A DNA stretch of 64,000 bases. Source: Octopus sinensis. Taxonomy: Eukaryota. The notes beneath the pieces were generated by a model that made no database searches, was not told the DNA's origin, and saw only the letters and a list, made by a program, of their open reading frames with translations. The translations under genes were made by a program, and so were the position numbers. The stretch lies in contig NC_043023.1 of NCBI RefSeq assembly GCF_006345805.1, positions 10,230,001 through 10,294,000 of the forward strand. The letters run 5' to 3'. Positions 1-53,406 of the stretch are shown piece after piece; within the stretch, counting starts at the first letter, position 1; each line of letters opens with the position of its first letter.

Positions 1-693
1 TTATAAAGCCATGAAATTTAGGATGGGGAGAGGCATTAATGTGGATTATAAGGACCCCAGTACATGACTGGTATTGTATTTTATTAGCCTAGCAAAGATG
101 GAAGGACATGGTGACCTCAGCAGGATTTGAACTCTGAACATAAAGTGTGGTAAATAAATACCACAAGGTATTTTGCCCAACAGCAATCAGACACAAAAAC
201 AGGAGAAAAGAGGGAGGACAATTTATTAAATGAACCCCTGGATATTACTGGTACAGATTTTCACTCCAGGTTGTTAATAAATACTCTGGCAGGATTTGAA
301 CCTGCAACATAAACAGATCAAACTAAACACTGTAAGGGAATGATTCTGCATTTAGACCAGGGTCAGAGGAAAGAGGAAAATTATAAGAGAGAGGGGGTGA
401 GGTGTTTTATATGGAATGAAAAGAAGAGAAGGAAAGATTTGAACTTGTAAAGTTGAGGTAACGAAGGATGAGATGAAGTAAAGAATCTAGTCAGGTAACA
501 ACAGCAACAATAATAATTAGGATGATTAATTAATGAAGTAGGTTACAGTGTCATTAGAGTGTGAGAGAGAGAGAGTTGAAGCACGACGTCCCATGGTGGT
601 ATTATGACATGAATGACTCAAAACAAGAAAACAAACGTTATTGAAAACATTAAAGAAACAGATTTGGATAATCCAAATCCATTGGGGACTTAC

Positions 694-1460
694 TTTTGAA
701 CTGCCAGATGGAGGGGAGTGTCACCATGTTTGTCCAGTTTATTGGCATCGATGCCATTTTGTTGTAGGAGAAGTTTAGCTGTGTCTGTGTGTCCATCCCA
801 ACAGGCAAGATGTAGAGGTGTCCGACCATATTTGGTCACCACCCTCACATCAGTGCCATTTTGTTGTAGGAGAAGTTTAGCTGTGTCTGTGTGTCCATCC
901 CAACAGGCAAGATGTAGAGGTGTCCGACCATATTTGGTCACCACCCTCACATCAGTGCCATTTTGTTGTAGGAGAAGTTTAGCTGTGTCTGTGTGTCCAT
1001 GAAATGAGGCATGATGTAGAGGTGTACAACCATCGTTGTCCACCACCCTCACATCAGTGCCATTCTGTTGTAGGAGAAGTTTAGCTGTGTCTGTGTGTCC
1101 ATAAAGTGAGGCAAGATGTAGAGGTGTCCGACCATATTTGTCCACCAACATCACATCAGTGCCATTCTGTTGTAGGAGAAGTTTAGCTGTGTCTGTGTGT
1201 CCATAAAGTGAGGCAAGATGTAGAGGTGTCCGACCATATTTGTCCACCAACCTCACATCAGTGCCATTCTGTTGTAGGAGAAGTTTAGCTGTGTCTGTGT
1301 GTCCATGAAGTGAGGCAAGATGTAGAGGTGTGCAACCATATTTGTCCACCACCCTCACATCAGTGCCATTTTGTTGTAGGAGAAGTTTAGCTGTGTCTGT
1401 GTGTCCATGAAGTGAGGCAAGATGTAGAGGTGTCCCACCATCATTATTTCGCTGAGTGAC
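694..1460 (-). CDS. Ankyrin-repeat protein, coding exon 4 (~7.5 tandem 34-aa ANK repeats); gene continues beyond window start
   Basis: Acceptor tttttAG at 1462-1461, phase 0 (VTQRNNDGGTPLHLA...); donor AA|GTAAGT at 693-688, so the ORF-track stop is intronic. Repeats match the ANK consensus (D-x-x-G-x-TPLHLA...GH...LLL). Confidence 0.92.
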
Positions 1461-2336
1461 CTAAAAACGATAAACAATAAAGACATTAAAGATGGCATCA
1501 AGTGGATGGGGTGGGGGGCAACGCAAAAATGAAAAATTTCAAAAAAAGAGAAAGAATCAGATTAATAAACAGGTGGAATGTAGTTGGAGAGGAGTAAATA
1601 AATGAGGTTCATATCATACCTGTACCCACAGACACACACACACATATATATATACATATAAACACACACACACATATATATATATATATACTCTCACATC
1701 CATATATATACACTCTCACACAAGGAAATGAGCAACTTTTGAAAGAGTCCCCACCACCACCACCGCTATTTTCTCATAAATGTGTTTATTTAAAGAATTT
1801 TTTTGCCAAAAACCCCCCGATTTCGGACACGGAGGTTCCGGAAAATTGCCAAAAAATCGGCAGTGGAATTTCCACCCCCTCCAAAATTCTTCAACTTTGA
1901 CTTTTTTCCCCCAACACTAACCCTAACCCTAACTACAGAAATGTTTTGAAATTTTTGTCCGAATCATCATCTCCGTATTTTTCCACAAATTCTGAAAAAA
2001 AAATTGTGTAAAAAGTAAAGAATGAAGGAAATGGGGGTGGGGGTAATTTAAAAATGCCGATTTTTGCCAATTTTTACCAATTTTTTTGCAGATTCGTATT
2101 TCCCTTAACCGAAAAGCGGGATTTGTATCGGGGAAAAAAATTTAAAGAAAGGGTGGTTTTTTTGTGGGTAGAAAAGGAAGTCTTGCAGCAACTTTTATTT
2201 AAAATAATATGAATCATCAGTTATGAAGAAACGAAATTTGGGGCACTAAACTGTATGTATATATCATATACATATAACACACACACATACATATATATAC
2301 ATATCTATATACACAAATATAAATGTATTCGCTAAC

Positions 2337-2493
2337 CTGTAAAATGTTATTTCCTTTGCTACTTAAAAGGACTTTGACTACATCTTCATAGTTCTTCCTC
2401 ACAGCCCGATGTAGAGGTGTGTAGCCCCATGAGTCCTGCTTATTAACATTTGCTCCCCTGGAAACTAAGGAGGCCACAGCATCAATTTTACGA
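2337..2493 (-). CDS. Ankyrin-repeat protein, coding exon 3
   Basis: Acceptor ctttcAG at 2495-2494, donor CAG|GTTAG at 2336; encodes (S)RKIDAVASLVSRGANVNKQDSWGYTPLHRAVRKNYEDVVKVLLSSKGNNILQ; phases 2/0 fit both neighbours. Confidence 0.9.
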
Positions 2494-5980: not shown

Positions 5981-6132
5981 CTTTTCACAGCATAATGTAA
6001 TGCTGTCAGACCTTCTTTGTCACTCATGTCCATATTGGCTCCAGATTCTATCAAGAAGGCTATGAGACTTGTGCTGCCCTGTTCACAAGCTGCCATTAAG
6101 AAAGTTTGACTGTGTGAGTTTATTTGGTTGAC
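5981..6132 (-). CDS. Ankyrin-repeat protein, coding exon 2 (not in ORF track)
   Basis: Acceptor ctcttcAG at 6134-6133, donor AG|GTAAG at 5980; 152 nt = VNQINSHSQTFLMAACEQGSTSLIAFLIESGANMDMSDKEGLTALHYAVK + AG; ANK motif, joins exon 3 in phase 2. Confidence 0.9.
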
Positions 6133-7744: not shown

Positions 7745-7828
7745 TGTTCCAGGATTTTCTTTGATAAGTCGTTCGACATCTTTAAAGTCCCCATCCACAA
7801 TGTTGCTTATAATCTTCTTCACATCCAT
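7745..7828 (-). CDS. Ankyrin-repeat protein, probable first coding exon (N-cap, MDVKKIISNIVDGDFKDVERLIKENPGT)
   Basis: ATG at 7828-7826 just inside an acceptor AG at 7832-7831; donor ACA|GTAAGT at 7744; 84 nt, phase 0, joins exon 2 in frame; resembles an ANK N-capping repeat. Confidence 0.8.
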
Positions 7829-8290: not shown

Positions 8291-8320
8291 TTATCTACTT
8301 ACCTGCCTGTCTCCCCTCTC

Positions 8321-9809
8321 TTAACCCTTTTGATACTAACCCGGCTGAAACCGGCTCTGGCTCTGTAGTACTAAGTCTTGTTTTCATAAGTTTTGAATTA
8401 AAATCTTCCACCAAACCTTAGTCACAATTTATGTTCCTAACACTAGCTTAATGATAACAAAGTTATTTTACTAAATTCTTTGTTATATTTAAAATTAATT
8501 GAAAGAAACACAGAGCATTTCAACAGAAATATGGTAACAAAAGGGTTAAAATATATAATAGAGAAACAATTCTTAACTCTTTTGATACCAGCCTGGCTGA
8601 AACTGCTTCTGGGCTCTGTGATAAAATGTCTTGTTTTCATAAGTTTTGAATTAGAATCTTCCATGAAACCTTAGTCACAATTTATTTTCCTAACACTAGC
8701 TTAATGACAACTAAGTTATTTTACTAAATTCTTTGTTATATTTAAAATTAATTGAAAGAAACACAGAGCATCTCAACAGAAATATGGTAAGAAAAAGGTT
8801 AAAATATATAATAGAGAAACAATTCTTAACCCTTTTGATACCAACCCGGCTGAAACTGGCTCTGGCTCTTTAGTATAAATGTCTTGTTTTCGTAAGTTTT
8901 GAATTAAAATCTTCCACCAAACCTTAGTCACAATTTATGTTCCTAACACTAGCTTAATGATAACTAAGTTATTTTACTAAATTCTTTGTTATATTTAAAA
9001 TTAATTGAAAGAAACACAGAGCATCTCAACAGAAATATGGTAACAAAAGGGTTAAAATATATAATAGAGAAACAATTCTTAACCCTTTTGATACCAGCCT
9101 GGCTGAAACTGCTTCTGGGCTCTGTGATAAAATGTCTTGTTTTCATAAGTTTTGAATTAGAATCTTCCATGAAACCTTAGTCACAATTTATTTTCCTAAC
9201 ACTAGCTTAATGACAACTAAGTTATTTTACTAAATTCTTTGTTATATTTAAAATTAATTGAAAGAAACACAGAGCATCTCAACAGAAATATGGTAACAAA
9301 AGGGTTAAAATATATAATAGAGAAACAATTCTTAACCCTTTTGATACCAGCCTGGCTGAAACTGCTTCTGGGCTCTGTGATAAAATGTCTTGTTTTCATA
9401 AGTTTTGAATTAAAATCTTCCACCAAACCTTAACAATTATTTTCCTAACACTAGCTTAATGACAACTAAGTTATTTTACTAAATTCTTTGTTATATTTAA
9501 AATTAATTGAAAGAAACACAGAGCATCTCAACAGAAATATGGTAACAAAAGGGTTAAAATATATAATAGAGAAACAATTCTTAACCCTTTCGATATCAAC
9601 CCATGTGAAACTACCTCTGGCTCTGTAGTACAAATATCTTGTTTTCTTAAGTTTTGAATTAAAATCTTCCAGCAAACCTTAGTCACAATTTATGTTCCTA
9701 ACACTAGCTTAATGATAACTAAGGTATTTTACTAAATTCTTTGTTATATTTAAAGTAATTGAAAGAAACACAGAGCATCTCAAAATAAATACAGTAATGA
9801 AAGGGTTAA
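8321..9809. repeat. Tandem array of six piggyBac-like MITEs (~253-bp period)
   Basis: Units start TTAA-C(C/T)CTTT at 8321, 8573, 8826, 9079, 9332, 9581 and end AAA(G/A)GG-TTAA; constant spacer aatatataatagagaaacaattc between units. Confidence 0.8.
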
Positions 9810-17904: not shown

Positions 17905-19615
17905 GTACACAAGCACGGGTTGGATGGTTTGACCGGGGTCTGGGAAGCCAGGGGCTGCACCAGGCTCCAGGCTGATCTGGCAGTGTTTCTACAGCTGGAT
18001 GCCCTTCCTAACGCCAACCACTCCGCGAGTGTAGTGGGTGCTTTTTACGTGCCGCCTGCACAGATGCCAGGGGAGTCTCGCATCGACCACAATCAGTTGG
18101 TGCCTTTAACATGCCACTGGCACGGGAGCCAGCCAAGGCAGTGCTGGCATCGGGCACGTTCGGATGGTGCTTTTTATGTGCCACTTGCACAGAAGCCAGT
18201 CAAGGCGGTGCTGGCATCGGCCACGTTCGGATGGTGCTTTTTATGTGCCACCGGCACAGAAGCCAGTCGAGGCGGCGTGCTTGACTACCTCATCCCATGT
18301 CTTCCTGGGTCTACCTCTCCCCCTGATACCTTCAACTGTTTGGGAGTGGCACATCTTCACACATTTCTCCTCGTCCATCCGCAGTACATGACCATACCAT
18401 CGCAAACGTCGCTCTTGCACACCACATCTGATGCTTCTTATGTTCAGCATTTCTCTCAGGGTGCTTACCCTCTGTCGTGCGCGCACACTGACATTACACA
18501 TCCAGCGGATCATGCTAGCTTCATTCCTTTCAAGTCTACGCATGTCCTCTGCAGTCACAGCCCATGTTTCACTACCGTGAAGCATGGCAGTTCGCACACG
18601 TGCATCATACAATCTACCTTTCACTCTGAGCGAGAGACCCTTTGTCGCCAGTAGGGGTAGGAGCTTTCTAAACTTTGCCCAGGCTATTCGTATTCTAGTG
18701 GTGACAGTCTCTGAGCATCCACCTCCACTACTAACTTGGTCACCCAGGTAGCAGAAACTATCAACTACTTCTAGTTTCTCCCCCTAGAGTGTGATGGAAT
18801 CTGTTTTCTGAGTATCTGTGGTGTCTATGGTCCCTGTGCATCTGCCGCACATGAAAGCTATCTTATCAGTTAATTTCCCTATGATGTTGCTGCACCTCTT
18901 ATGCGTCCATAGCTTACGCTGGGTACATCTTATGGAGTTTCTACCTACACCTTTCCTACAGATTGAGCAGGGCCATCTGCCCGAGGGTGTGTGCTGAGTT
19001 CGCCTTTCTGCTTACTATAATTTGGTCTTTGCTACATTTACTCTAAGGCCCTTTGATCCTAACCCTTGCTTCCACACCCAAAATTTCTTTTCTGGTTCCG
19101 GTAGTGATTCTGCTATGAGAGCCAGGTCATCAGCATAGAGCTCCCAGGGGCAACCTGTTTTGGATTCCTCTGTTATTGCCTGGAGGACTATGATGAATAA
19201 AAGGGGACTGAGGGCTGAGCCTTGGTGTACACCTACTTCTACCCGGAATTCTTCACTATATTCGTTGCCAATCCTAACCTTGCTGACAGCCTCTCTGTAT
19301 AGGGCCTGTACAGCCCTTATTAGCCATTCGTCAATCTCCAGTTTCCGCATCGACCACCAGATAAGGGATCAGGGACCATGTCAAAGGCTTTCTCCAAGTC
19401 CACAGAAGCTATGTAGAGGGGTTTATCTTTAGCTAGGTACTTCTCCTGCAGTTGTCGGACCAGGAATATAGCATCCGTGGTGCTTCTACCTGGCACAAAA
19501 CCGAACTGAATCTCATCTAAGCAAATCCTCTCCCTAATGAGATGGGCTATGACCCTCTCTGAGACCTTCATCACCTGATCCAACAGTTTAATAACCCTGT
19601 AGTTATTTGTATCTA
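17905..19615 (-). mobile_element. RTE-clade LINE, 5'-truncated, degenerate, with 3' UTR
   Basis: QFGFVPGRSTTDAIFLVRQLQEK, GVHQGSALSPLLF, YADDLAL, AMLHGSETW, RRLRWYGHV; same family as 24119-26930. Confidence 0.9.
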
Positions 19616-20484
19616 GTAGTTTATCTATTGACCCTGAAAGAATTTGACTTCAGCTGGATTTGATCTCAGAACATAGAGAACCGCAACAATTACTGCAAAG
19701 CTCTCAATTGGCTATCGTGAAGACCCGATAGAAAAAGCAGCTAAACCTTACTCAGCTAACGCCTTACTGTTATAAGAAAGAAAGGTTATTGTAGATAATG
19801 TAATTTCAACATTACTCATAGCCAAAAGACAGGATGGTCATGGATAAAACGTCTTTAAGCAAATGATTTCTGGATTAGAGATGATCTGGGAGCTAGACAA
19901 CATCATCGAAAATTAGAACTCACTAGAATTAAATGTTCACTAGAGATAGCACAAGAGGTAGGCGTGGCTGCATTTCCCGCGACACATATCGAACCCGTGC
20001 TCTATGGTGTCAGCTTGATGCAGTCATATGTATATCAGGGACAATATATGTGTGGCTGCAATTCAGCCATTTGATCAGATAACTGGAAGAGAGGGCAACA
20101 ACAATAACAATGCCAACAATATCAAATACACACACACACACACACACACAAAACACCACCACCACCAGCAACAAGATAATCATCGTTAATTTTAGAGAGG
20201 ATCACTTTTCTTAAATTAACAAGAATAATAGACACCTGGCGTAATTTAATATCGTCAACAAATAGTGCCACACCTGAGATGTTAGTCACGTTGTGATTGA
20301 GAAATCGGTCAACATAAATATTACTTTACACACTCTGCTATCATATTTTCTTATGCAACAATCAATTTCTATCCTGTTTCTTTATTTTGAATTCATAACA
20401 AATATTTTAAGAATTTTTATCCTGATTTCAAATGTCGGACAAAACACTGAATCGGAAAACTGATACGTCTAAAACTGGTGGTGC

Positions 20485-24118: not shown

Positions 24119-26929
24119 ATCATCATCATCGTTTAACGTCCGCTTTCCATTCTAGCATGGGTTGGACGGTTCAACTGTGGTCTGGGAAGCCCAAAGGCTG
24201 CACCAGGCCAGTCAGATCTGGCAGTGTTTCTACAGCTGGATGCCCTTCCAAACGCCAACCACTCCGTGAGTGTAGTGGGTGCTTTTTATGTGCCACCGAC
24301 ACAGGTGCCAGACAAGGCTGGCGAACAGCCACGCTCGGATGGTGTTTTTTACGTGCCACCGGCACGAAGGCCAGGTGTGGCTGGCACGGCCACGATCAGA
24401 TGGTGTTTGTTACGTGCCCACTACACGGAGGCCAGTCAATGCGGTACTGGCTATGGCCACATTCGGATGGTTTTCTTACGTGCCACCGGCACTGGTACCA
24501 CAAAAATACAAATTCCATTGATGTTCATTGATTTTGATTTGATTTGATTTTCACTTCCCTCAACAGGTCTTCACAAGTAGAGTTATGTGTCCCAAGAAGG
24601 AAGGTATGCACAGGTGGACTGACTACGTCCCAGGTAGGGGCCATGGGTTATGGCCTCACATGTCCTGCCGGGTCTTCTCGCGCACAGCATACTTCCAAAG
24701 GTCTCAGTCTCTGGTCATTTCCTCGGTGAGACCTAAAGCGCGAAGGTCGTTCTTCATGACCTCGTCCCAGGTTTTCCAGGGTCTACCTCTTCCACAGGTT
24801 CCCTCAACCGCTAGGGTGTGGTACTTTTTCACACAACTATCTTCATCCATTCTTACTACGTGTCCATACCAGCGTAGACGCCTCGTTTGCACACCACATC
24901 TGATGCTTCTTAGGTCCAACTTTTCTCTCAAGGCACTTACACTCTGTCGGGTATGAACACTGACATTACACATCCAACGGAGCATACTGGCTTCATTTCT
25001 TGTGAGCTTACGCATATCCTCAGCAGTCACGGCCCATGTTTCACTGCCATGTAGCATGGCTGTTCGCACACATGCATCAAACAGTCTGCCTTTTACTCTG
25101 AGCGAGAGGCCTTTTGTCACCAGCAGAGGTAAGAGCTCTCTGAACTTTGCCCAGGCTATTCTTACACTAGCAGTTACACTTTCGGCACACCCACCCCCGC
25201 TACTGACTTGGTCACCTAGGTAACGGAAACTATCAACTATTTCAAGTTTTTCTCCCTGGAATGTGGCGGAAGATGGTCTCTGTGCATTTTCAGTCTTTAT
25301 TGAACCAGAGCATCTGCCACATACAGAAACTATCTTCCTAGTTAGCCTTCCTTTGACAGTGTTGCACCTCTTATGTGTCCATAGCTTACACTTGGTGCAT
25401 CTTATAGAGTTCCTACCTACGCCTTTTCTACAGATCGAGCAGGGCCATCTACCTGAAGGTGTTTGAGATTTGTCTACCTTCCTACTTATTAGGACTTTGG
25501 TTTTAGCTAGATTGACTCTAAGGCCCTTCGATTCTAATCCTTGCTTCCATGCCTGAAACTTCACCTCGAGTTCTGATAGTGATTCAGCAATTAGAGCAAG
25601 GTCGTCAGCATAGAGGAGCTCCCAGGGGCATCCTGTCTTGAATTCCTCCGTTATTGCCTGGAGGACTATGATAAATAGGAGGGGACTGAGGACTGAACCT
25701 TGGTGGACCCCAACCTCCACCTGGAATTCTTCACTGTTCTCGTTGCCAACCCTCACCTTACTAGCAGCGTCCCTGTACATGGCACGCACAGCACTCCCTA
25801 ACCATTCATCTATCCCTAGTTTCCTCATTGACCACCAGATAAGGGATCGGGGGACCCTGTCAAAGGCTTTCTCCATGTCAACGAAAGCCAGGTACAGAGT
25901 TTTATCTTTGGCTAGGTATTTCTCCTGCAGCTGTCTCACCAGAAATATGGCATCGGTGGTGCTTTTCCTGGCACAAAACCAAACTGCATCTCGTCTAGGT
26001 TGACTCTCTCTCTAATCAGTTGGGCTATGACCCTTTCCGTAACCTTCATTACCTGATCCAACAGCTTGATACCTCTATAATTACTTGTATCTAGAGCGTC
26101 ACCCTTACCTTTGTAGCAGTTGACTAGTGTGGTGCTACACCAGTCATTGGGTATGACTCCTTCGTGTATCACCTGGTTAACTATACGGGTGACTAAACTA
26201 TAGCCGACACTGCCAGATATTTTGAGCATCTCAGCAGTAATTCCTGATGGGCCTGGGGCTTTCCCTGTCTTCATGCTTCCAATTGCCTTAACTACCATGG
26301 AACTGTCAACTCGGATAGCTGGTCCCTCTATTGGGTCAACATTCGGCAGACTCTCTTTATCCCATTCATTCTCTTTCTTGAGCAACCTTTCATAGTGGCA
26401 TCTCCAAACATCTCTCTTTGCATCCTCATTTAGCGCAAGTGAACCATCATCCATGCGGACACATTTCTCTCCTACCACATCACGATTCTCTCTCACACAT
26501 TGTCTTGCAACATGAAACACCTCAAGTCTTTGGTCCTCACGGCGCAGAACATTGGCAAATTTTTTCTTATCTGCTTCCCCTCTAGCTAAATATACCTGTC
26601 TCCTAGCTTCTCTTTTCGCAGTCTGATACAATTCCCTACTACCGCCTTTCCTCCAGTCCTTCCAAGCCTGTCTCTTGTCTCTAATAGCCCTGTCTACAAC
26701 ATTGTTCCACCACCATGTTACCCTGGGACGAGATGGGACTTTGCTCCATCCACAGATCTGGTCAGTGGCTCTCAGCAGATTGTTCCGTAGAAACCTCCAG
26801 TTGGCTTCCACATTTTGTGATGCTATATCCCCTTCTATTTCGTCGAAAGCTTCGAGTAGAACTTCTCTAAATCTCCGTCCATTTACAGGATCTTTAAGTT
26901 TCCAGACTCTTCTCCTCCGAGCTGGTCTT

Positions 26930-26930
<1 letters not shown>
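24119..26930 (-). mobile_element. RTE-clade LINE, 5'-truncated; ORF split by one frameshift near 25960; long 3' UTR ending in (GAT)n
   Basis: ORFs 25936-26994 and 24704-25939 join across a shortened A-run (PGKSTTDAIF expected); YADD, QGSVLSPLLF, internal CSIC...CTKC; UTR runs to aaacgatgatgatg at ~24119. Confidence 0.93.
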
Positions 26931-26976
<46 letters not shown>

Positions 26977-27151
26977 TATATATATTATATACATATATAT
27001 TGTATATATATGTGTGTGTGTATTTATTTAGACATATTCTCCAGTTGTGCTTTAGTGAAAAAGGGTTCAATATCCCCAGATACATTGTTGAGGTTAATAT
27101 CAGCTTTAGAATTCATCTAAAAGAAAGAAAAATAGCAAAAATAAAACATTC

Positions 27152-38164: not shown

Positions 38165-38835
38165 TCCCTGCTAAAATTGCCAAGAAGGCCGACGGTGTCT
38201 TGGCATCACTCACCAAGTCCTTTGTCAGCCGCTCTCCGGCCATCTACCTGCGGCCTCACCTGCAATTTGCATCACCCGTCTGCAACCCCTATCTTGCCCA
38301 CCATATTAATCGTCTGCAAGCAAGCCCTGCAACCAAGAGAATAGCCTCCATCAGGCATTTGCCATATTCTCTAACGCCTTACTTCTTCCCTGGCCATCGA
38401 CACATTCAAACTCCGACGTCTGGCAGCTGACTTGGCAGACACCCAGACAATTATTAACCCTCTTACAAACAATAACTCTGACCACCTTTTCAAACTCCAC
38501 CCGTCTCACACCCGTCCACATGTTTACAAAGTCAGAAAACAGCAGCGCTCCTTCCATGGCTTTCCCAAACATTTTTCCAAGCTGAGACTTGCTGAAGCAT
38601 GGAACAAACTGCCGGCATCAGTTGTTGGTTGTCGGATCACTGCATCCTTGAAAACTTCCATGCTTCCTGAGATTCTCCAACACCACACCTGAGCTTTCTC
38701 CCCTCCATACACACAAGCAAGCATCTATCTGACTCATACACTGTTCACTCCCCAGACAGATGCTTTATACGCAGTTTTTGACAAGTTGTGGGGCACCTGA
38801 GCACTGTATACAATAACTTCATTATTATTATTATT
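38165..38835 (+). mobile_element. 5'-truncated, decayed copy of the CR1 family seen at 46729-50861
   Basis: KIAKKADGVLASLTKSFVSRSPAIYL and AEAWNKLPASVVGC align with the ORF2 C-terminus of the full copy. Confidence 0.9.
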
Positions 38836-40284
38836 CGCCAACACCACACCTGAGCTTTCTCCCCTCCATACACACAAGCAAGCATCTATCTGACTCATAC
38901 ACTGTTCACTCCCCAGACAGATGCTTTATACGCAGTTTTTCACAAGTTGTGGGGCACCTGAGCACTGTATACAGTAATTTCATTATTATTATTATTCGCC
39001 AACACCACACCTGAGCTTTCTCCCCTCCATACACACAAGCAAGCATCTATCTGACTCATACACTGTTCACTCCCCAGACAGATGCTTTATACGCAGTTTT
39101 TCACAAGTTGTGAGGCACCTGAGCACTGTATACAATAATTTCATTATTATTATTATTCGCCAACACCACACCTGAGCTTTCTCCCCTCCATACACACAAG
39201 CAAGCATCTATCTGACTCATACACTGTTCACTCCCCAGACAGATGCTTTATACGCAGTTTTTCACAAGTTGTGGGGCACCTGAGCACTGTATACAGTAAT
39301 TTCATTATTATTATTATTCGCCAACACCACACCTGAGCTTTCTCCCCTCCATACACACAAGCAAGCATCTATCTGACTCATACACTGTTCACTCCCCAGA
39401 CAGATGCTTTATACGCAGTTTTTCACAAGTTGTGAGGCACCTGAGCACTGTATACAATAATTTCATTATTATTATTATTCGCCAACACCACACCTGAGCT
39501 TTCTCCCCTCCATACACACAAGCAAGCATCTATCTGACTCATACACTGTTCACTCCCCAGACAGATGCTTTATACGCAGTTTTTCACAAGTTGTGAGGCA
39601 CCTGAGCACTGTATACAATAATTTCATTATTATTATTATTCGCCAACACCACACCTGAGCTTTCTCCCCTCCATACACACAAGCAAGCATCTATCTGACT
39701 CATACACTGTTCACTCCCCAGACAGATGCTTTATACGCAGTTTTTCACAAGTTGTGAGGCACCTGAGCACTGTATACAATAATTTCATTATTATTATTAT
39801 TCGCCAACACCACACCTGAGCTTTCTCCCCTCCATACACACAAGCAAGCATCTATCTGACTCATACACTGTTCACTCCCCAGACAGATGCTTTATACGCA
39901 GTTTTTCACAAGTTGTGAGGCACCTGAGCACTGTATACAATAATTTCATTATTATTATTATTCGCCAACACCACACCTGAGCTTTCTCCCCTCCATACAC
40001 ACAAGCAAGCATCTATCTGACTCATACACTGTTCACTCCCCAGACAGATGCTTTATACGCAGTTTTTCACAAGTTGTGGGGCACCTGAGCACTGTATACA
40101 GTAATTTCATTATTATTATTATTCGCCAACACCACACCTGAGCTTTCTCCCCTCCATACACACAAGCAAGCATCTATCTGACTCATACACTGTTCACTCC
40201 CCAGACAGATGCTTTATACGCAGTTTTTCACAAGTTGTGGGGCACCTGAGCACTGTATACAGTAATTTCATTATTATTATTATC
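38675..40284 (+). repeat. Tandem array: 10 x 161-bp copies of the CR1 3' end (ORF2 stop, 3' UTR, stem-loop, (ATT)n tail)
   Basis: Unit starts at 38675, 38836, 38997, 39158, 39319, 39480, 39641, 39802, 39963, 40124. Confidence 0.97.
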
Positions 40285-41535: not shown

Positions 41536-44500
41536 CGTCATCATCATTGTTCGACCGTGGTCGAGACAATGGAATTTACTATGTTACGCCAGACTTCACG
41601 GTCCATCATAGCATTACGGAGGTCCTGTTGCTGGATGCCTGTATCCCTGGAGATTACATCAGGGTAGGAGAGTGTGCGCCCTCTGGTATTACAAGTAGAT
41701 GGCTTCCAGAGGAGAAGAGTAGAAATTACCTCGTTTTCAGCTCTACAACAATCTCCAGTGAACTGGACTCTCCTACCTTTCACAAGAGATGACACAGGTG
41801 GTAATTTCCCATATATTTGCATTTTGGTTGGATGGCGCCTCCACGAGAGATTTTGAGCTCTCATAAGGAGGCGAGTGTAGGTTCCATCCAACCGCCTCTC
41901 AAGCTTCTTTGATAACGTCCAGGTTTCTGAGCCATATAGTAGAATTGGTTCGACTGTGGTTTTGAATATTTCAAGTTTGAAGTCTCTACTTAGATTTGAT
42001 GACCAGATCTTATGCATGTCATTACAGGCTGACCAGGCCATACCCTTTCTAGTTAGAAAGTCTTTTCCAGATGATGATATGTATGACCCAAGATATTTAT
42101 AATCAGAAACCATATTTAAAGGTGCACTGTTGAGAGTGTGGATGATGCAATCACTGTTGGACAGGCACTTGTTTATGTATTCAGTTTTGGTCTCATTGAG
42201 GTAAAGACCTACACAATTTGAGGCCTGTTCAAGAGATTGTAAAAGAGACTGGGCATTGGAGAGAGAATCACTGATAAGAGTGATGTCGTCAGCAAAGTCA
42301 GTGTCTGTCAAGTTCTCAGCTGGGTGTCTGGAACTTCTTCTTGGTTTTATTTCAAAGCCCTTGCCAGAGATGGTATCAACTGACATACGTAGCACATAAT
42401 CAACAACAATGATGAAAAGAAATGGGGCGAGTGTGTCTCCCTGCAGTATTCCGGCTTTGATTGAGAAAGATGATGTTTCTCTATCAGGGGTTAAGATGGT
42501 TGAAGACGTATCTGTGTAGAGGACCTTGATGGCAGAAATAATTTTGTCTGGTATCCCATAGAGCTTAAGGGTTTCAAACATCTTGTACCTATCTACAGAA
42601 TCGAACGCTTTAGAAAAGTCTACAAATACCATTGCAAGATCGCGATTAAATGCTTTTGATTCTTCAATAAGTCTGCGCAGGCATAGTATCTGGCTCAGCG
42701 TTGAGCGCCCATGTCTGAATCCATTTTGGTTCTTTCGGAGCAAAGGTTCAACAAAAAGGACAAGACGATTTAGGATCAGTTTGTTGTACAGTTTTGCAGC
42801 AATTGACATTAGAGATATGCCCCTGTAGTTGGTGACGAGGGACAAATCGCCTTTTTTGGGTATTGGAATGATTTGAGATTGGTGCCAAAGCTTTGGAGCG
42901 ACAAAGGTGGAAAGTGTGTGGTTGCAGAGGTTGAGCAAAAGTGTGTGAAATCTATCATCCTTCCAAATTACAGCTGGAATGTTGTCGGGACCAAATGCTT
43001 TCGAGGCTTTTAGTTGCTTGGTGGCTGCTGTTAGTTCAAATATGGTAAAAGGGGAGGTGTTGATGTCCAGCGTGTCTGATATAGGCACACTTGGGAGAGT
43101 GGGGTTATCAGGGATTTTGGCATTCTTCCCAAGGAGGTTTTTAAAATGGGTTGACCAATTTTCTAAACGCTTCTTAGCTGATCTCCCTTTAATTCTAATT
43201 GATGACCCAGAATTTTTGCCTGATAGGTCTTTGATGGATTTCCAGGCGAGATGGTGTTTTTTACTAATGTGCTCTTTCGATAGTTTACTAATTTTGCCAT
43301 TGATAAATTCGACCTCGGCGTTCAAGTAAGCCTCATCAAGATTCTTCCTGGCAGCTATGAGTTGGATCTTCAGTGACTGGGATGGAGAACGGTGGTAAGC
43401 TAGTAATATAGACTTTAGATGGTTTCTGGCTTCGATGACATTTGGGGAATTAGAAGGTTTGCTCTGGCCCCTACTCTTCTTTTTGGGAAGAGTAGCCAGT
43501 GCAACTTCCTCTGTTGATTTGATGAGGCTGCTGTATACTTCCTCAATGTTCTCAGCATCTATTTCAGAGGTAGACAGAGATTGAAATGTGTTATAGACCT
43601 CAATAGTAAATTGTTTGGACATATCGGGGTTAGATAAGACTTCCTCCCAGTCGATCATTTTGATCGGGTGAGGCTTAGTTTTTTTGGATGAGCGAAGACT
43701 AAGCTTAACGGTAGCTGATACAATTCTGTGGTCAGAGCCGACAGAACTAAAGGAAGAGTAGGATCTCAAGTCTTTAACACTATTGCGCCATTTCTTTCGA
43801 AAGATGAGGTAGTCAATTTGTGCCCTATCACCAAGTGGGGACTCAAATGTCCAAAGTTGACCTTTTGGTTTCATAAAAGAATTGTTGGAGGTGTAGAGAT
43901 TAAATTCCTCCAAGAAGTCTTTGAGCATTTCTCCGTTCCGATTGGTTTTAGAGTTGAAAGTAAACTTGGTCTCATCGGGTCCTAGTCTAGCATTCAGATC
44001 ACCAGCTATAACCAGAAAATTATGGAGAGGTACTTGCTCAATGGTTGAACGAAGGGTTGTATAAAAATTTTCAATTTCGTCTGCCACAGACGAATTATGT
44101 GGGCTATACACACATACCAATGTTGGTTTTGGGTTTCCATCTATCTCAAGCACCATAATTCTAGGTGAGATTGACTCTATACTCAAGAGAGTATCACTAG
44201 CCTTTGATGAAAGTAGAAATCCAATACCTCCAACTGTTGAATTAACAGTATTCTTTGATGCTGAGGAGGTTACAAGTTGATAAGAACCGACTTGATGGTA
44301 TTTGAGGATGTTGTCAGGGTGGTAAAATCGGTGTTCTTGGACAGCTATTATATCAATGCCATGTGATTCTGCATTTGCACCAAGTTCTTCTAGACGGCCA
44401 AGAGAGCCGAGGGTGCGGGCATTGAGGGTGCTGAGTATCGTATGATTTTTACAGCTGATGAGGTGTTTGTTTGGTTGGGGGCTGACTCTTCTCCATCAGG

Positions 44501-44545: not shown

Positions 44546-46728
44546 ATACATACATACACATACACACACACATGATGGCTGCCCCCCCCCTCGTTATCGA
44601 GTATGACCATTGCACGAAGCTCAACCGTTATCTGCGCTGTGATCGAATGTGACATTTTTAGCCCAGCCAAAGACCTTTAATGTCTTGTACAGAAATGGCA
44701 GCTAAAACCTTTCCCGGCCAACAGCCGGCCGTAGTTGGAACTGGGCTTCATGTCCCTTTGAATGTCTTCTCCAATTACACTCCCTTCCACACATGCCCAA
44801 CACATAGGATTAGTATGGTGTCTAACACCATCACCACGGGCCAGCTTGTCACTCATCTCTCTCTCTCACACATATAAAATGGACCCTTTAGTTTCACCAC
44901 ACATTAGGGTAAATTTTCACACTAATATATATAATACCTGTTGGCATTCTTACCTGTTCTGACCGCGGGAAATCTCAAAAGGGACCACAAGGATCTCGGA
45001 ATACAATATCAAAAAACTCTGTTCATTCCCTGGGTTTTTCCAATTTCTATGTAACACGAAATTTCTTTCATATTTTCTTCATTTTGTAGGGAAAAAAACC
45101 CCACTTTATATAAAATATAAATAAAATGAACCCTTTATTTTCACTTTTTGCCACACAGTATATATAATACCTGTTTTGTTTTTTTACCGCGGGAAATTTC
45201 TTTGGAAACAAACTGCCAGCATCAGTTGTTGGTTGTCGGATCACAGCATCCTTGAAAACTTCCATGCTTCCTGAGATTCTGCTCGTGTACAAGAAGACTT
45301 GAAGCAGCAAACTGTAAGAACTCGTGAAACAGACTTTCTCAAATTCATGGAAAAAAATTTCCGAACGTGTAGAAGGTTCTTCAGAAAGCAGTTGATAACT
45401 TCTGATGTCTAAATGGGATCTTTACCTTTTGAAGTACAGATTTTAAAAAGTAATTTTTTGTATCTAAAGATCCGTCTAAGTGATTTAATTAGCTGTGAAG
45501 GTCCCACCGAAAACAATAGCGAGAGAAAGAACAGGTGGAAAAGTTCAGAGCGCTATTAATTCCGAAGCGATTCTGTGTCCGGGAGACATGGCTATTTGTT
45601 GCAGACTATTTGTGAAAACTGGGAAATGAAATGATTCAAGTACGATACGTTTAAAATGAAATTTTAGTGTGCATGGATTCATACATCTGTATACAGAATC
45701 AAAAGTCAGAATTCAGGGAAAAGCATTTCAACAAATTTTCTTTTTTACAAAAACAAAAAAAGAAAAAAAGGTGGGTACAGAAAAGATTCCTGATACCATG
45801 AACATTTAAGGAAAGTATATAATTATGAAATATTATAAAGTTGTATTTTCATCGATACCGAATGGATGAAATGCAACGTCGACTTCAGTGAAATTTGAAC
45901 TCGGGACGTAAATGCCGCTGAATAATAACCTAATACTTAAATTAGTTTGCTGCAAAAAAGGGTTCATTTAACAAATTCTTTTTCTGATATTTCTCTAGAA
46001 ATATCTTTTATTAAAATAGTTCACCATCCAATTGTAACCTTTGTACTCATTTGATTCATTGATTAGTTGTAGATCTTGGATCAACGCTTTTCCAAGTAAA
46101 TCTACAGCATCAGACTTTGAATTATAAATAGTATTGGATGGCAGCTGGAGTCTTAGAGTAGCTGTCCACCGAAGTTCCATATTATATGGGAATGAAAAAG
46201 GAAAAGGAGGAAAATACAATGTTACTAAAACAAAGACACATTCACAAGTAGACAAACAAATGGTTTGATTAGGGTATAATCAATTTGGCAAAGAAACTAA
46301 AGAGAAAATATTACGACGATGACCACCACAGATCTACAATGGAAGAATTCACCACGTGTAGTTGAGGGTAAAAGAAAACGTTGAACGACATTAAGTACAT
46401 CCAAAATTTATAAAGCAGCAACATACATACATAGATACTTGTAGCACACATATATATATATACGTGCAGAGTGAAAATAAATCACACTATTTAATGTTGA
46501 CGGACTACACTGCAAAAAATAAAAATATCACAGATTTCATTTCATTTCATTTCTGTTTACAAACTGTCTCCGTGTCTACATGGGTCATAACTAAACATAT
46601 GCACAAATCCTTTTGTATATACACACACAATATTTAAGAAAAAAAGGAATTTACACAAAAAAAAGAACGAAACGAAAACAAATATTTTACTCTTATCGTA
46701 TTGTTGTTTACATTTTCTGTCTCTACGG

Positions 46729-47973
46729 ATGAGCAGAAGCAACAGAATCGCCATGGTGGAATCCATAGTGGAATGCGATAAGACTGGTCGCTGCTCCAAA
46801 ATAGAACACTGCCCAGAAAATCACACCTGCCACATCTGTACGGAACCCGAAAATACATTCCGTAATCGCTGGGTCGAATGTGGGACATGTCTCGTCTCTG
46901 TCTGCCTCCAATGTGCCACGGACTTTCAGAAGATCCCAGGCCAAAAAAAGAGCCATCATAATGCTATGATGGATAGACTCTGGAAGATGGTCCAGCTTAA
47001 ATCTTGGACTTTTCAGTGTCAGGCATGCGTGCCTCCACAACCGACAATTGTGTCTCCCCCTGCCACTCCCGTGGAGGAGGCGGAACAGCAACAGCAGCAA
47101 CAACAAAATCAACCACAACTAGAGCAGCAGCAGCAGCAACAACAACAACAGCAGCAACAACAAAATCAACCACAACCAGAGCAGCAGCAACAACAACAGC
47201 AACAACAACAACAACATCAACAACAACAGCAGCAACAACAAAATCAACCACAACCAGAGCAGCAGCAGCAGCAACAACAACACCAATTGACCAGTGCGGT
47301 TCTTGCAGAACTGCAACAATCGATCTGTGCTTTAAGAGGGGAAGTAGCAGGAATAAAAGCAAGCATTCAGGTTGGACTCCACAATGAGGGGTCTTATCGG
47401 AATGCTCTGCTAAAGAACCTCCCTGTACCTGTACCTGTACCTCTTGTCGCATCTAAGACCGCGGATTCTGCAACCCATGAAGTTATTGCCATTGGGGTAC
47501 CAGAAGACATAGCTGATCTTCAGGCATTTGCTGCCAACTCAGCCAAAGACCTAGGCTGCGTTCCCCCAATGGGTGCTCTCCGCCTTGGACGACCTGGCCC
47601 AAAACCCAGGCTCATCAAGCTGTCTTTTTCGGACCACGCTGAGGCAACCTCTTACCATCTGGCCTCAGTTAAAGCCGGGCGTGAAAATCGGACCACCTTC
47701 TGAACACGCCCAGGCTTACCGTCCGATGTACATCCGAAGCTACGTGTAGCGGCTTCCCTGAACAGGAACTCAGCTCTACAAGAAAGCTTCAGTCTTCGGG
47801 AAGATGGACAAATCTGGAGATTTGTTAAGACTGCTGAAACGTGGAAGAGAGATACCAGCTGGTCTGAGTGCTCTCTACCCACAATAACTAACACTGAAAA
47901 AAATCTAAAAAGACTACAGCAACTCAGGGAAACTAAGCCAGAACAACCTGCCATCCTCTACACACCATCATAA
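46729..47973 (+). pseudogene. CR1-clade LINE ORF1 (PHD-like Cys cluster, polyQ, coiled coil, RRM-like C-terminus) with one internal TGA at 47701-47703
   Basis: CHIC...WVECGTCLVSVCLQC...WTFQCQAC; the frame stays open past the TGA (F*TRPGLP...) to TAA at 47971-47973. Confidence 0.8.
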
Positions 47974-50861: not shown

Positions 50862-51401
<540 letters not shown>

Positions 51402-52039
51402 GGAATAGATTCATTTCCCAAGTTACAGACATTGTTTATAAGTTTTATTTTTCAAGCACAACATCCAAATTTTGAAAGTTTCTACTACCATAACAAATGC
51501 ACCTGTGTCTTACCAAGAAGTTTATAAAGAGCAAAGGAATGCTTCTCAGTAAACAACTCTAGACTTGTTTCTTTGCTTGTGAATCAGTGGTCACATCTAC
51601 AAATGATGATGTCCCTGAGTCTTTTCAAAGTGATTCAGAAAACAATTATAATAATAATATTTTGTTTATTCTAAATGATCTTGACATTGTTTTTGACTTT
51701 ACATAAAATATTCTTTACATTCTACTGTTGTTTTATTGTCATTTATTTACAAGTATTATAAATTTTATTGGTAAAATATTTTTCTAGAAATGAATTACAA
51801 TTTATAACATTGCTTCTATGGGAAATTATTGCTTTGCTTTATGAGTTTTCACTTTAGGAGCAATCTCCAGGAAGAAATTAAGTCATATATCAAGGCATTA
51901 TTGTATCTGACATTATTTTGGCACAAGGCCAGCAATCTCAGGGGAAGGAGTAAGTTGAATAACCACATGGATCAGCATGTGTGCTTTTTACATGAACTAG
52001 CACAAATGCTTTTTACAGGGAGTGGCATTGCACGATATA

Positions 52040-52436
52040 TCTATTTGTATAAAGCTGAAGTTGTCTGTGTGTGTGGCAGGTTTTGCAGCCTTCAACTAAC
52101 ACTATCTCTACCGAGACACTAGCGCAAGTTGACCAAAATTGAGAGTATGATAAAAGAAGGCTTGCTCTTCCTTCCGTAGAAGAAAAAATTGAAATCGCAC
52201 CATGTCAACACCAAATATTATTTAGATCAGAAAGGTGCTTTTTTTTCTATGAAAATCCCTATTTTTTACGATTCTTTGACTGCTGTGTCACCGTTTTTCG
52301 GTGTATTTCAACCAGAAAACTGTTCACTTAAAGAGAATAACAAGCTACATAATGCAAGATTTTTACTTTTCAAAAATTCCAATTCTAATGGGTCGAAAAG
52401 AAAATAAACCTGAGCAACGCTGGGCGATACTGCTAG
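52040..52436 (+). mobile_element. Non-autonomous Helitron-like element (duplicate at 59340-59736)
   Basis: A|TC start; same 3' end as 40283-40648 (cctgagcaacgctgggcgatactgCTAG|T). Confidence 0.65.
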
Positions 52437-53069
52437 TATATATATGAAGCTCTGTAACTTCTCATATATATTTGAAGGTGCATGGCTCAATCGTGAGTTC
52501 AATTCATGTCATCTTCATTACATTGAACAATGTTTAAAGTTAAAGGGTCAAAGCGAAATGCAGCCATATTTTCTCCACAAAACTACTTTAAAACGTTTTC
52601 CAATGGCTGAATGACGAAACGTATTAATCTGGTTTCTGCCCTAAATATTCTCGTAAAGTAAGGATGCATCTTGTACACCAGCAAATACTCAGTGAAGTGC
52701 AAGTTAATTCAAAATTAGTCAACGCCGTTGCCAAACACTGAAGAATCTTGTTAATAATTTGGCTAATCTAGTGAAATTCAAAAGTTACTCCAATACTGAT
52801 TCGGTGTAAGGAATGGAAACCTACTTATTTCCCCTTTAATTTCTATTTACTTTCTTAAATCTCCCATACTGAAGGATTATGCTTATTAGAGCCATGCTAT
52901 CCAGGCCAACCGTGTACAATTACTAACATTTTCTCACACTAAACCATCCCACTTACTAAAAATATCCTTCTTGTAGAGGATGGTGTTTAGTCAACTGGTA
53001 CTTATTTTATCGACCCCGAAACGATGAAAGGCACAATCGACCATGGTGGAATTTGAACTGAGAACTGTG

Positions 53070-53288: not shown

Positions 53289-53406
53289 GTCTTACTTCTA
53301 ATCTCCCGCATTTACTACGAACGTAGCGACGGTCGAAATAGCGGTTAGCATTTCGTCCGGCGTGCTAACGATCCTGCCAGCTCGCCGCCCTGCAAAATGC
53401 TTTAGA

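What the first reader, a model, noticed from the sequence alone, without database searches (positions are those of the whole stretch)
694..1460. Natural DARPin-like exon: frozen ankyrin scaffold, variation confined to the binding face
Seen: seven 102-bp repeats in which GHTDTAKLLLQQNG is nucleotide-identical except a CAA/CAG wobble, while changes cluster at D-[K/N]-[Y/D]-G-[C/R/G]-TPLH[L/H]A-[S/C]-[L/F/W]-[H/Y/D]-G and the preceding beta-turn. I count two synonymous variant sites against about ten non-synonymous codon positions. Established: D-x-x-G-x and A-x-x-G are the positions randomised in engineered DARPin libraries because they form the target-binding surface. Inference: a homogenising repeat scaffold under diversifying selection, possibly a variable recognition protein (immune or anti-transposon) whose specificity changes by repeat gain, loss and conversion within one exon.
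Basis: partly seen in the sequence, partly recalled or inferred. Interest (0 to 1): 0.75.

Follow-up and report, generated by a model that had tools for sequence, protein, structure and literature searches.

The report
Hypervariable ankyrin array in octopus ligase
One exon of an Octopus sinensis gene for a putative ubiquitin ligase with a death domain holds seven near-identical ankyrin repeats that differ almost only at the residues expected to touch a target. Its many young gene copies differ in repeat number and in those same residues, which is the pattern of a fast-evolving recognition protein.

Summary
Window 694-1460 (minus strand) is exactly one 767-nt exon. It holds seven 102-nt (34-residue) ankyrin units plus a half unit. 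Codons 15-28 (GHTDTAKLLLQQNG) are nucleotide-identical apart from one CAA/CAG site. Ten codon positions vary non-synonymously, against two or three synonymous variants.

The gene (RefSeq model P0001, misnamed "PP6 regulatory ankyrin subunit B-like") encodes about 13 ankyrin repeats, a C3HC4 RING and a C-terminal Death domain. It belongs to an Octopus family with over 100 exon matches in this genome.

Seven close paralogs carry 4 to 18 units. A probable O. vulgaris ortholog has 14 units against 8, with about 0.7% intron divergence.

Across 52 distinct units, non-synonymous diversity at the positions randomised in DARPins is 0.31 per site. Synonymous diversity is 0.08, and flanking introns differ by 1-4%. 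Two tests give P = 0.001 and 2e-12.

The scaffold is therefore young or homogenised rather than "frozen". The binding face evolves several-fold faster than neutral.

This matches the "highly internally conserved" ANK/TPR/WD repeats of fungal NLRs and the PRDM9 zinc-finger array, but sits on an animal ANK-RING-Death chassis. An immune or anti-transposon role is plausible and untested.

The parts
694..1460 (-). Exon 4 of the gene: 767 nt, entered in phase 0 and left with 2 nt over. It holds the whole array of seven 34-residue ankyrin units plus a terminal half unit.
   Evidence: Open frame and splice sites; TRF; Pfam Ank E = 1e-72, 7 stretches; letter-for-letter match to residues 132-386 of RefSeq protein P0001.
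1347..1448 (-). Unit 1: NNDGGTPLHLASLHG-HTDTAKLLLQQNGTDVRVV. Its head adjoins unique sequence. It is positionally orthologous to unit 1 of paralog L018, from which it differs by 1 nt (Gly/Trp at position 5).
1245..1346 (-). Unit 2: DKYGC..ASLHG..RLV.
1143..1244 (-). Unit 3: DKYGR..ASLYG..MLV. It differs from unit 4 by 2 nt.
1041..1142 (-). Unit 4: DKYGR..ASLYG..RVV.
939..1040 (-). Unit 5: DNDGC..LHHASFHG. Its nearest relatives are units in other paralogs (L003, L005).
837..938 (-). Unit 6: TKYGR..ACWDG.
735..836 (-). Unit 7: TKYGR..ACWDG. It is identical to unit 6 over codons 1-28, and its tail IDANKL leads out of the array.
694..734 (-). Terminal half unit DKHGDTPLHLAVQ. The repeat is completed by the next small exon (QHYGVVSLMLAQ), which lies outside the window at about L031 7012-7040.
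2337..2493 (-). Exon 3: 157 nt, one ordinary ankyrin repeat (..NKQDSWGYTPLHRAVRKN..). Among paralogs it varies at the same repeat positions (1, 3, 5, 10, 14).
5981..6132 (-). Exon 2: 152 nt, an ankyrin repeat (VNQINSHSQTFLMAACEQGS..).
7745..7828 (-). Coding start, exon 1: ATG at 7828-7826, MDVKKIISNIVDGDFKDVERLIKENPGT, donor ACA|gtaagt.
   Evidence: matches the N-terminus of P0001.

Best explanation
The exon encodes the central, variable part of a roughly 13-repeat ankyrin solenoid in a cytosolic protein of 726 aa. The protein continues with a complete C3HC4 RING finger, a linker of 17-residue cassettes and a C-terminal Death domain. The gene belongs to a large Octopus family that automatic annotation calls "MIB2-like", "ankyrin-3-like" or "PP6 ankyrin subunit-like".

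Shown:
- The array grows and shrinks by whole 102-nt units, which always keeps the frame. The window itself carries fresh duplicates (units 6 = 7 and 3 ~ 4).
- Paralogs have 4, 6, 7, 8, 10 and 18 units.
- The units share one scaffold whose synonymous sites are no more diverged than the neighbouring introns.
- The codons for repeat positions 1, 2, 3, 5, 10, 13 and 14 (beta-turn and inner helix, the concave binding face) have changed several-fold faster than neutral sites, often by two or three bases per codon.

Inferred:
- Unequal recombination and conversion keep the scaffold uniform and shuffle the units, while selection favours new or different residues on the binding face. The family thus explores many binding specificities on one stable fold.
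- The array is the target-recognition module of an E3 ubiquitin ligase. The Death domain couples recognition to oligomeric signalling or cell-death machinery. The logic resembles TRIM5-type restriction factors or fungal NLRs, and the targets would be fast-evolving (pathogen or selfish-element) proteins.
For: Gene and domains:
- Exons and splice sites were read directly.
- P0001 matches them.
- Pfam finds Ank in 10 stretches, zf-C3HC4_3 at 528-571 (40.3 bits, cut-off 27) and Death at 642-718 (38 bits, cut-off 22.6).
- All eight RING zinc ligands are present.

Family:
- 144 matches to the array exon and 145 to the pre-RING/RING exons in the same genome.
- Open frames of the homologous exon step by 34 aa: 86, 120, 154, 188, 222, 256, 290.
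- Unit counts read directly are 4 to 18.

Selection, from 52 distinct units:
- pN at the pre-specified DARPin positions is 0.309. pS over all sites is 0.083, and scaffold pS is 0.044.
- Counts on a tree give 5.0 non-synonymous changes per site there, against 1.2 synonymous per site (binomial P = 2e-12).
- A conservative count of distinct states gives a rate ratio of 2.9 (P = 0.001).

Neutral yardstick: introns next to the exon differ by 1-4% among these paralogs.

Independent replicates:
- The single-copy ankyrin of exon 3 varies at positions 1, 3, 5, 10 and 14 among paralogs, and pN is at or above pS in 10 of the 15 pairs.
- The probable O. vulgaris ortholog of paralog L008 differs by 3/439 in the intron and by 2 nt in exon 3. 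Both exon-3 changes are non-synonymous, at positions 13 and 14. It has 14 units against 8, and none of its units is identical at protein level to any of the 52 O. sinensis units.
- Another O. vulgaris family member with a different scaffold shows the same signature. Its units 1 and 2 differ at 14 nt, all in codons 1-13, while codons 14-34 are identical.

Structure: AlphaFold gives pLDDT 83-97 over the array, with helix 1 at unit positions 7-14. An engineered ankyrin library randomises positions 2, 3, 5, 10, 13 and 33 as one continuous binding surface (PMC4308713).
Against: - Units recombine, so the tree-based count inflates recurrent change. The P of 2e-12 is optimistic.
- Synonymous diversity inside the variable codons is also raised (0.27, on only 4.3 sites). 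This could mean that old variants are being retained there, rather than new ones being fixed.
- Some "paralogs" lie on unplaced contigs and may be haplotigs.
- The one probable haplotig pair (L005/L009, 99% identical) has the same unit order, so turnover is not visible at allelic depth.
- Two arrays carry frameshifts: L004, and the O. vulgaris array L035. These are either pseudogenes or long-read errors.
- Outside the array the two closest paralogs already differ at about 5% of residues, so constraint on the whole gene may be weak.
- No expression, binding, ligase or immune data exist. Literature searches found nothing on this family.
Confidence: 0.72

Rival explanations
1. Neutral young repeat. 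The units were duplicated very recently. The framework is held by ordinary structural constraint and the surface residues simply drift. No selection for diversity is needed and no special recognition role follows.
For: Within the window alone, about 18 non-synonymous changes against 3 synonymous do not differ significantly from the roughly 3:1 neutral expectation (counts). Surface positions of all ankyrin proteins are the least constrained. Non-array parts of close paralogs also diverge at near-neutral pace.
Against: Drift cannot exceed the neutral rate. Non-synonymous diversity at the pre-specified positions (0.31) is 4-7 times the synonymous diversity (0.08 over all sites, 0.044 in the scaffold) and about 10 times the intron divergence. 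Two- and three-base codon replacements sit beside 60-nt stretches with no change. Both exon-3 differences between probable orthologs lie at positions 13 and 14, with no synonymous change.
Confidence: 0.12
2. Real diversifying array, but not defence. The family would be a set of E3 substrate adaptors for the animal's own proteins (for example neuronal or developmental substrates), or would regulate apoptosis. The diversity would reflect sub-functionalisation among many paralogs rather than an arms race.
For: RING plus ankyrin is the layout of MIB-type ligases, which act on endogenous substrates. MIB1 ankyrin repeats are among the PDB matches. Octopus genomes are known for lineage-specific expansions tied to the nervous system (own knowledge, Albertin et al. 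2015). No pathogen link was found.
Against: Endogenous targets rarely drive omega far above 1 and rapid unit turnover between sister species. Death domains, clustered multicopy genes, frequent pseudogene-like copies and binding-face hypervariability are typical of immune or conflict genes (Dyrka 2014).
Confidence: 0.25
3. Assembly or annotation artefact. The array or its paralog variants would come from a noisy long-read assembly (collapsed, expanded or chimeric repeats), or the locus would be a decaying pseudogene.
For: Many copies lie on unplaced contigs. L004 and L009 contain 1-2-bp frame shifts. O. vulgaris L035 has a 103-nt unit.
Against: The window copy lies on a 21-Mb chromosome scaffold, is only 767 nt long, and is open with intact splice sites. 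All other exons of the 726-aa model are intact. Long-read errors are mostly indels, not codon-specific multi-base substitutions. The same pattern is seen in an independent assembly of another species.
Confidence: 0.04

Closest known systems
Highly internally conserved (HiC) ANK/TPR/WD repeat domains of fungal NOD-like receptors (Paoletti 2007; Dyrka et al. 2014, PMC4986451)
   Same: Repeats within a gene are near-identical. Repeat number varies. Evolution is concerted through repeat exchange. Positive selection acts at a handful of positions that map to the concave face (inner helix and beta-hairpin) of the ANK solenoid.
   Different: The host is an animal; Dyrka reports such repeats in only 0.8% of metazoan repeat proteins. 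There is no NACHT or NB-ARC domain, and the partner domains are a RING and a Death domain. Polymorphism within a population has not been shown here.
PRDM9 (and KRAB-ZNF) zinc-finger minisatellite arrays
   Same: A tandem array sits in a single exon, with a unit length divisible by three. There is near nucleotide identity except at the codons for target-contacting residues. Unit number and order change quickly between close species (own knowledge: Oliver 2009, Thomas 2009).
   Different: The fold is ankyrin, which binds protein, not zinc finger, which binds DNA. The family has many paralogs rather than one gene. No link to recombination is known.
DARPins and the ANK-N5C library (engineered consensus ankyrin binders)
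   Same: There is one consensus scaffold. Diversity is restricted to positions 2, 3, 5, 13 and 14 (DARPin) and 10 (ANK-N5C). DARPins are among the best PDB sequence matches.
   Different: The array is natural. The unit has 34 residues rather than 33, with one extra residue in the QQNG loop. Position 33 (V34 here) is invariant. Positions 1 and 27 vary, and 27 is roughly the semi-random "z" position. The array is fused to RING and Death domains.
MIB1/MIB2 E3 ubiquitin ligases (the name given to many family members by automatic annotation)
   Same: Ankyrin repeats are followed by a C-terminal zf-C3HC4_3 RING. The MIB1 ankyrin domain is a PDB match (8v0e, 4e-40).
   Different: No MIB/HERC2, ZZ or MIB-repeat domain is detected. 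There is a single RING. A Death domain is present. The ankyrin array is hypervariable.
TRIM5alpha-type restriction factors
   Same: A RING E3 is joined to a rapidly evolving, positively selected target-binding domain, and the family is multicopy and lineage-specific (own knowledge).
   Different: The recognition fold differs (ANK against B30.2/SPRY). There is no B-box or coiled coil. The similarity is of logic only, and function here is untested.
ANK + Death proteins (NF-kB p100/p105, ankyrins, ANKDD1, DAPK1)
   Same: Ankyrin repeats and a Death domain are combined in one polypeptide (own knowledge).
   Different: None of them has a RING, and none has a homogenised hypervariable array. Sequence identity to ankyrins and ANKRD28/52 is only 28-37%.

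Membership tests
Ankyrin repeat (Pfam PF00023 clan) | 33-residue helix-turn-helix repeat with the TPLH..A..G motif, scoring above the Pfam threshold | tested here: met
   Exon alone: Ank 235.9 bits (cut-off 21.1), 7 stretches. P0001: 318.7 bits, 10 stretches. AF2 shows regular helix pairs with pLDDT 83-97.
RING-type E3 ligase (zf-C3HC4_3) | C3HC4 cross-brace with all eight zinc ligands, above the Pfam threshold | tested here: met
   PF13920 40.3 bits (cut-off 27) at residues 528-571. The pattern C-x2-C...C-x-H...C-x2-C...C-x2-C was read in L031 517-378. Ligase activity was not tested.
Death domain superfamily | Death domain profile match above threshold | tested here: met
   PF00531 38 bits (cut-off 22.6) at residues 642-718. 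The fold is not confirmed, because AF2 confidence there is below 50.
MIB1/MIB2 (mind bomb) ligases | N-terminal MIB/HERC2 domains flanking a ZZ finger, plus MIB repeats, ahead of the ankyrin repeats | tested here: not met
   The Pfam scan of the full 726-aa protein lists no MIB_HERC2, ZZ or MIB repeat. The protein starts directly with ankyrin repeats.
PP6 regulatory ankyrin subunits (ANKRD28/44/52), the RefSeq name of this protein | About 1000-aa all-ankyrin protein, orthologous to ANKRD28/44/52 | tested here: not met
   Identity to ANKRD28/52 proteins is only 26-37%. Those proteins lack RING and Death domains. The name is an artefact of repeat similarity.
Highly internally conserved (HiC) repeat domains sensu Dyrka 2014 | At least 85% identity between repeats over at least 100 residues | tested here: inconclusive
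   Mean pairwise identity of the seven units is 84% at protein level and 91% at nucleotide level, over 238 residues. That is at the threshold. Many pairs exceed it (units 3/4 and 6/7 are at or above 94%).
HiC repeat domains: evolutionary behaviour | Variation in repeat number, plus positive selection at binding-face positions | tested here: met
   4-18 units among paralogs, and 8 against 14 between probable orthologs. Variation within a population was not tested.
NOD-like receptors / STAND proteins | Central NACHT or NB-ARC NTPase domain | tested here: not met
   No such domain appears in the Pfam scan of P0001.
DARPin-like variability pattern | Variation at repeat positions 2, 3, 5, 13, 14 and 33, with the remaining framework fixed | tested here: inconclusive
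   Five of the six positions are the most variable (entropy 0.9-2.2 bits). Position 33 (V34) is invariant, and positions 1, 10 and 27 also vary. The pattern is largely met, not fully.

The most novel reading that the evidence does not exclude
Octopuses carry a germline-encoded, rapidly diversifying repertoire of intracellular sensors built as ANK-RING-Death proteins. A natural "DARPin library" of shuffled 34-residue units would recognise viral, parasite or transposon proteins. Recognition would be converted into ubiquitination and death-domain signalling. This would be an animal counterpart of fungal NLR repeat hypervariability and of TRIM5-type restriction, evolved independently in cephalopods.
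Probability: 0.28. Interest if true: 0.82.

Novelty: new variant of a known kind. Interest (0 to 1): 0.62.

Why it matters
Invertebrate immunity is usually described as a fixed set of pattern receptors. Very few animal gene families show a built-in way to generate binding diversity.

This array combines the evolutionary mechanics of PRDM9 and fungal NLR repeats with an effector chassis (RING plus Death) not previously linked to such arrays. It sits in cephalopods, whose immune recognition is poorly known.

It offers three things:
- a testable candidate repertoire;
- a natural experiment on which ankyrin positions evolution randomises, which turn out to be almost the protein engineers' choice;
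- a warning that automatic names ("PP6 subunit", "MIB2-like", "ankyrin-3-like") and gene models hide the family. The O. vulgaris array is split across gene models or missed.

Tried and rejected
- Gene model. My first model skipped a 12-codon exon, so the phases did not fit. The RefSeq protein and a back-translated pattern resolved this.
- Second protein-database search, with the exon alone. It returned only generic ankyrin proteins at or below 48% identity. Together, it led me to think O. vulgaris lacked this array type. That was wrong. Searching with the RING-Death part and reading the O. vulgaris locus showed a 14-unit HTDTAKLLLQQ array, which sits outside the RING-Death gene model P0228 and partly inside a neighbouring called gene; it contains a 103-nt unit (1-bp insertion).
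- Own-genome loci are not given to Python as files. I pasted the sequences or imported them through DNA alignment.
- AlphaFold without an alignment was informative only for the array. Residues 403-726 have pLDDT below 50. No surface calculation or fold search was attempted.
- "Scaffold frozen by selection at nucleotide level" is rejected, because introns are as similar as the scaffold's synonymous sites.
- CpG decay explains a few changes (CGG/TGG, CGT/CAT, TCG/TCA) but not the multi-base codon replacements.
- The plus-strand ORF 700..1002 is the stop-free antisense of the repeat, not a gene.
- Literature searches for this family in octopus or molluscs found nothing.

Full report
WHAT IS THERE

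The window is Octopus sinensis chromosome scaffold C27:10,230,001-10,294,000. Tandem Repeats Finder reports 752-1441 with period 102, 6.8 copies, 94% matches and no indels.

On the minus strand the frame 690..1460 is open. It is bounded by tttttag|GTC at 1460 and CAAAA|gtaagt at 694.

Cut in register, it holds seven 102-nt units (34 residues each) and a 41-nt half unit. Codons 15-28 (GHTDTAKLLLQQNG) are nucleotide-identical in all seven units except CAA/CAG at codon 26.

Non-synonymous variation sits at codons 1, 2, 3, 5, 10, 12, 13, 14, 32 and 33. The synonymous variants are CAA/CAG, TGC/TGT and AAT/AAC. Units 6 and 7 are identical over 28 codons, and units 3 and 4 differ by 2 nt.

Variable columns are enriched in the positions randomised in DARPins: 8 of 17 against 3.0 expected, P = 0.002.

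THE GENE

Upstream, on the minus strand of the window, lie:
- the start exon (7828-7745, MDVKK...);
- exon 2 (6132-5981);
- exon 3 (2493-2337).
All three encode ankyrin repeats.

Downstream, outside the window, lie:
- a 12-codon exon;
- two more exons, one with an ankyrin repeat;
- a RING exon;
- several 51-nt cassette exons, each encoding a 17-residue repeat;
- the Death-domain exons.

The RefSeq protein P0001 (726 aa) matches these exons letter for letter. It is named [quoted passage not shown].

Pfam finds Ank in 10 stretches, zf-C3HC4_3 at 528-571 (40.3 bits against 27) and Death at 642-718 (38 bits against 22.6). It finds no MIB/HERC2, ZZ or NACHT domain. The automatic names are therefore repeat-similarity artefacts. 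The architecture is ANK-RING-Death.

THE FAMILY

The array exon has 144 matches in the same genome, and the pre-RING/RING exons have 145. About a dozen copies are close (at least 80% identical in the pre-RING exon).

Open frames of the homologous exon come in steps of 34 residues: 86, 120, 154, 188, 222, 256, 290.

I read seven close copies at nucleotide level. Their unit counts are:
- 4 units: L018, the gene of P0002, 122 kb away on the opposite strand;
- 6 units: L005;
- 7 units: the window copy and L002;
- 8 units: L008;
- 10 units: L003;
- 18 units: L004, which has two frameshifted units.

All share the scaffold HTDTAKLLLQQ[N/D]GTDVRVV and differ at the same positions. The introns, and even a transposase remnant in intron 4, are shared, so whole genes were duplicated.

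IS IT SELECTION?

Within the window alone, about 18 non-synonymous against 3 synonymous changes is not distinguishable from neutrality. The paralogs give the power needed.

Results from 52 distinct units:
- Pairwise non-synonymous diversity at the pre-specified DARPin positions (2, 3, 5, 13, 14, 34) is 0.309 per site.
- Synonymous diversity is 0.083 over all sites and 0.044 in the scaffold, where pN is 0.026.
- Parsimony counts on a unit tree give 5.0 non-synonymous changes per site there, against 1.2 synonymous (P = 2e-12). This is inflated by recombination.
- Counting only distinct states gives a rate ratio of 2.9, P = 0.001.
- Amino-acid entropy peaks at positions 1, 3, 13 (2.1-2.2 bits), 14, 5, 10, 27 and 2.

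The neutral yardstick matters. The introns flanking the exon differ by only 1-4% among these copies (1.8-2.3% for the window against L018), much like the scaffold's synonymous sites. The scaffold is therefore not frozen by constraint on the DNA. It is young, or kept uniform by exchange. It is the binding-face codons that have run ahead, often by two or three bases per codon (TCA-CTT-CAT against TGT-TGG-GAT).

A caveat: synonymous diversity inside the variable codons is also raised (0.27, on few sites). This fits retention of old variants at these codons while everything around them is homogenised. That scenario also requires selection for diversity.

INDEPENDENT REPLICATES

1. Exon 3, a single ordinary ankyrin repeat, varies among paralogs at repeat positions 1, 3, 5, 10 and 14. 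pN is at or above pS in 10 of the 15 pairs.

2. O. vulgaris locus L035 (OX597842.1, 29.71 Mb) is the probable ortholog of paralog L008.
   - Intron divergence is 3/439.
   - Exon 3 differs by 2 nt, both non-synonymous, at positions 13 and 14.
   - Its array has 14 units against 8.
   - None of its 13 in-frame units equals any of the 52 O. sinensis units at protein level.
   - Orthology is not proven, because paralogs within O. sinensis are equally close in their introns.

3. Another O. vulgaris member (L034) has a different scaffold (GSKDVVELLLKHKDTDVNAV) and the same signature. Its units 1 and 2 differ at 14 nt, all in codons 1-13, and codons 14-34 are identical.

4. The one probable haplotig pair (L005/L009, 99% identical over 3 kb) has the same unit order. 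Turnover is therefore not seen at allelic depth.

STRUCTURE

AlphaFold places the array in a regular solenoid with pLDDT 83-97. Helix 1 lies at unit positions 7-14 and helix 2 at 17-25.

Positions 1-5 are the beta-turn. Positions 10, 13 and 14 share one face of helix 1 (the i, i+3, i+4 rule). Position 12 (Ser/Cys) faces the other way and changes conservatively.

Engineered libraries randomise positions 2, 3, 5, 13, 14 and 33 (DARPins; Binz 2003, own knowledge; general statement in PMC8683736). The ANK-N5C library randomises 2, 3, 5, 10, 13 and 33, described as one continuous binding surface (PMC4308713).

The octopus array varies at five of the six DARPin positions and at position 10. Position 33 (V34) is fixed.

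HOW IT PROBABLY WORKS

Shown:
- an in-frame unit array that gains and loses units;
- a uniform scaffold;
- hypervariable binding-face codons;
- a complete RING and a Death domain in the same protein.

Inferred: the array is the target-binding module of an E3 ligase. Unequal recombination and conversion shuffle and homogenise the units, and selection favours new paratopes. The Death domain links binding to oligomeric signalling or cell death. A defence or anti-selfish-element role is the most economical reading of the evolutionary pattern, but nothing here tests it.

COMPARISON WITH WHAT IS KNOWN

The closest described phenomenon is the set of highly internally conserved ANK/TPR/WD repeats of fungal NLRs. 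These show repeat-number polymorphism, concerted evolution and positive selection on the concave face. The authors found such repeats in only 0.8% of metazoan repeat proteins (PMC4986451).

PRDM9 zinc-finger arrays behave alike at DNA level.

The octopus case differs in host and in effector domains (RING plus Death, no NOD). I found no paper on it. I therefore rate it a new variant of a known kind.

LIMITS

- Unplaced contigs may be haplotigs.
- The long-read assemblies contain frameshifts.
- Recombination confounds tree-based tests.
- No population, expression or biochemical data were available.

Noticed in passing
L032 8900-9547 (C27:10,218,900-10,219,547, minus strand; outside the window): The 17-residue repeats after the RING (VCPKSEEEATQAVAESV, ECPRCREKAVKTVVESI and others) are each a separate 51-nt exon inside a tandem genomic repeat of about 166 bp (exon plus intron). 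Their number differs among isoforms and paralogs (2 to 6). This is a second variable-number module in the same genes, probably used by alternative splicing.
   Followed up: partly
L035 2186-3667 (O. vulgaris OX597842.1, about 29.71 Mb): A 14-unit HTDTAKLLLQQ array lies outside the RING-Death gene model P0228, partly inside a neighbouring called gene. It contains a 103-nt unit (1-bp insertion). P0228 instead joins an unrelated N-terminus to the RING-Death half.
   Followed up: partly
L004 1501-3389 (G000:C12648): The longest array has 18 units, mostly the single type DNAGWTPLHRASYNG. Two units are 100 nt long and break the frame. This is either a recently amplified pseudogene or long-read errors.
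   Followed up: partly
window 56608-58158 (+), also 50939-51398 (+), 55158-55467 (-), 62575-62871 (-): C2H2 zinc-finger gene arrays with an 84-bp period (21 copies at 82% identity in 56907-58681). One open frame of 517 aa holds about 15 fingers that differ mainly at the QNDTLTKH-type recognition helix.
   Followed up: no
window about 51800-55500 versus 59100-62900: A segmental duplication of about 3.7 kb lies at an offset of 7.3 kb. Several ORFs are identical or near-identical in both copies (for example 52016-52204 = 59316-59504).
   Followed up: no
window 41547-44495 (-), 48005-50755 (+), 24704-27027 (-), 18241-19649 (-): There are long open frames of non-LTR retrotransposon type (reverse-transcriptase motifs such as FADD/YADD). 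The 983-aa frame at 41.5-44.5 kb is uninterrupted.
   Followed up: no
window 38672-40283 and 8319-9809: Two satellite-like tandem repeats: 161 bp x 10 at 99% identity, and 253 bp x 5.9 at 92%. The second lies just upstream of the gene's start exon.
   Followed up: no
L031 9541-9852 (intron 4, outside the window); also L002 3110-3529 and L005 3000-3419: The same transposase-like ORF remnant (..KTKMHHMVTAPSSKMPLG..) lies at the same place downstream of the array exon in several paralogs. The duplications therefore copied whole genes with their introns.
   Followed up: partly
window 1917-1935 (intron 3): A short telomere-like run (CTAACCCTAACCCTAAC) is also present at the homologous place in paralogs L003 and L008.
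   Followed up: no
window 46591-47700 (+): A 370-aa open frame has a long glutamine-rich CAA/CAG tract (47084-47286). It lies next to retroelement sequence, and its nature is unknown.
   Followed up: no
G000:C29:1,721,000-1,727,000: An uninterrupted 1317-aa open frame of ankyrin repeats, about 48% identical to the array. It is another, much longer ankyrin array in the same genome.
   Followed up: no
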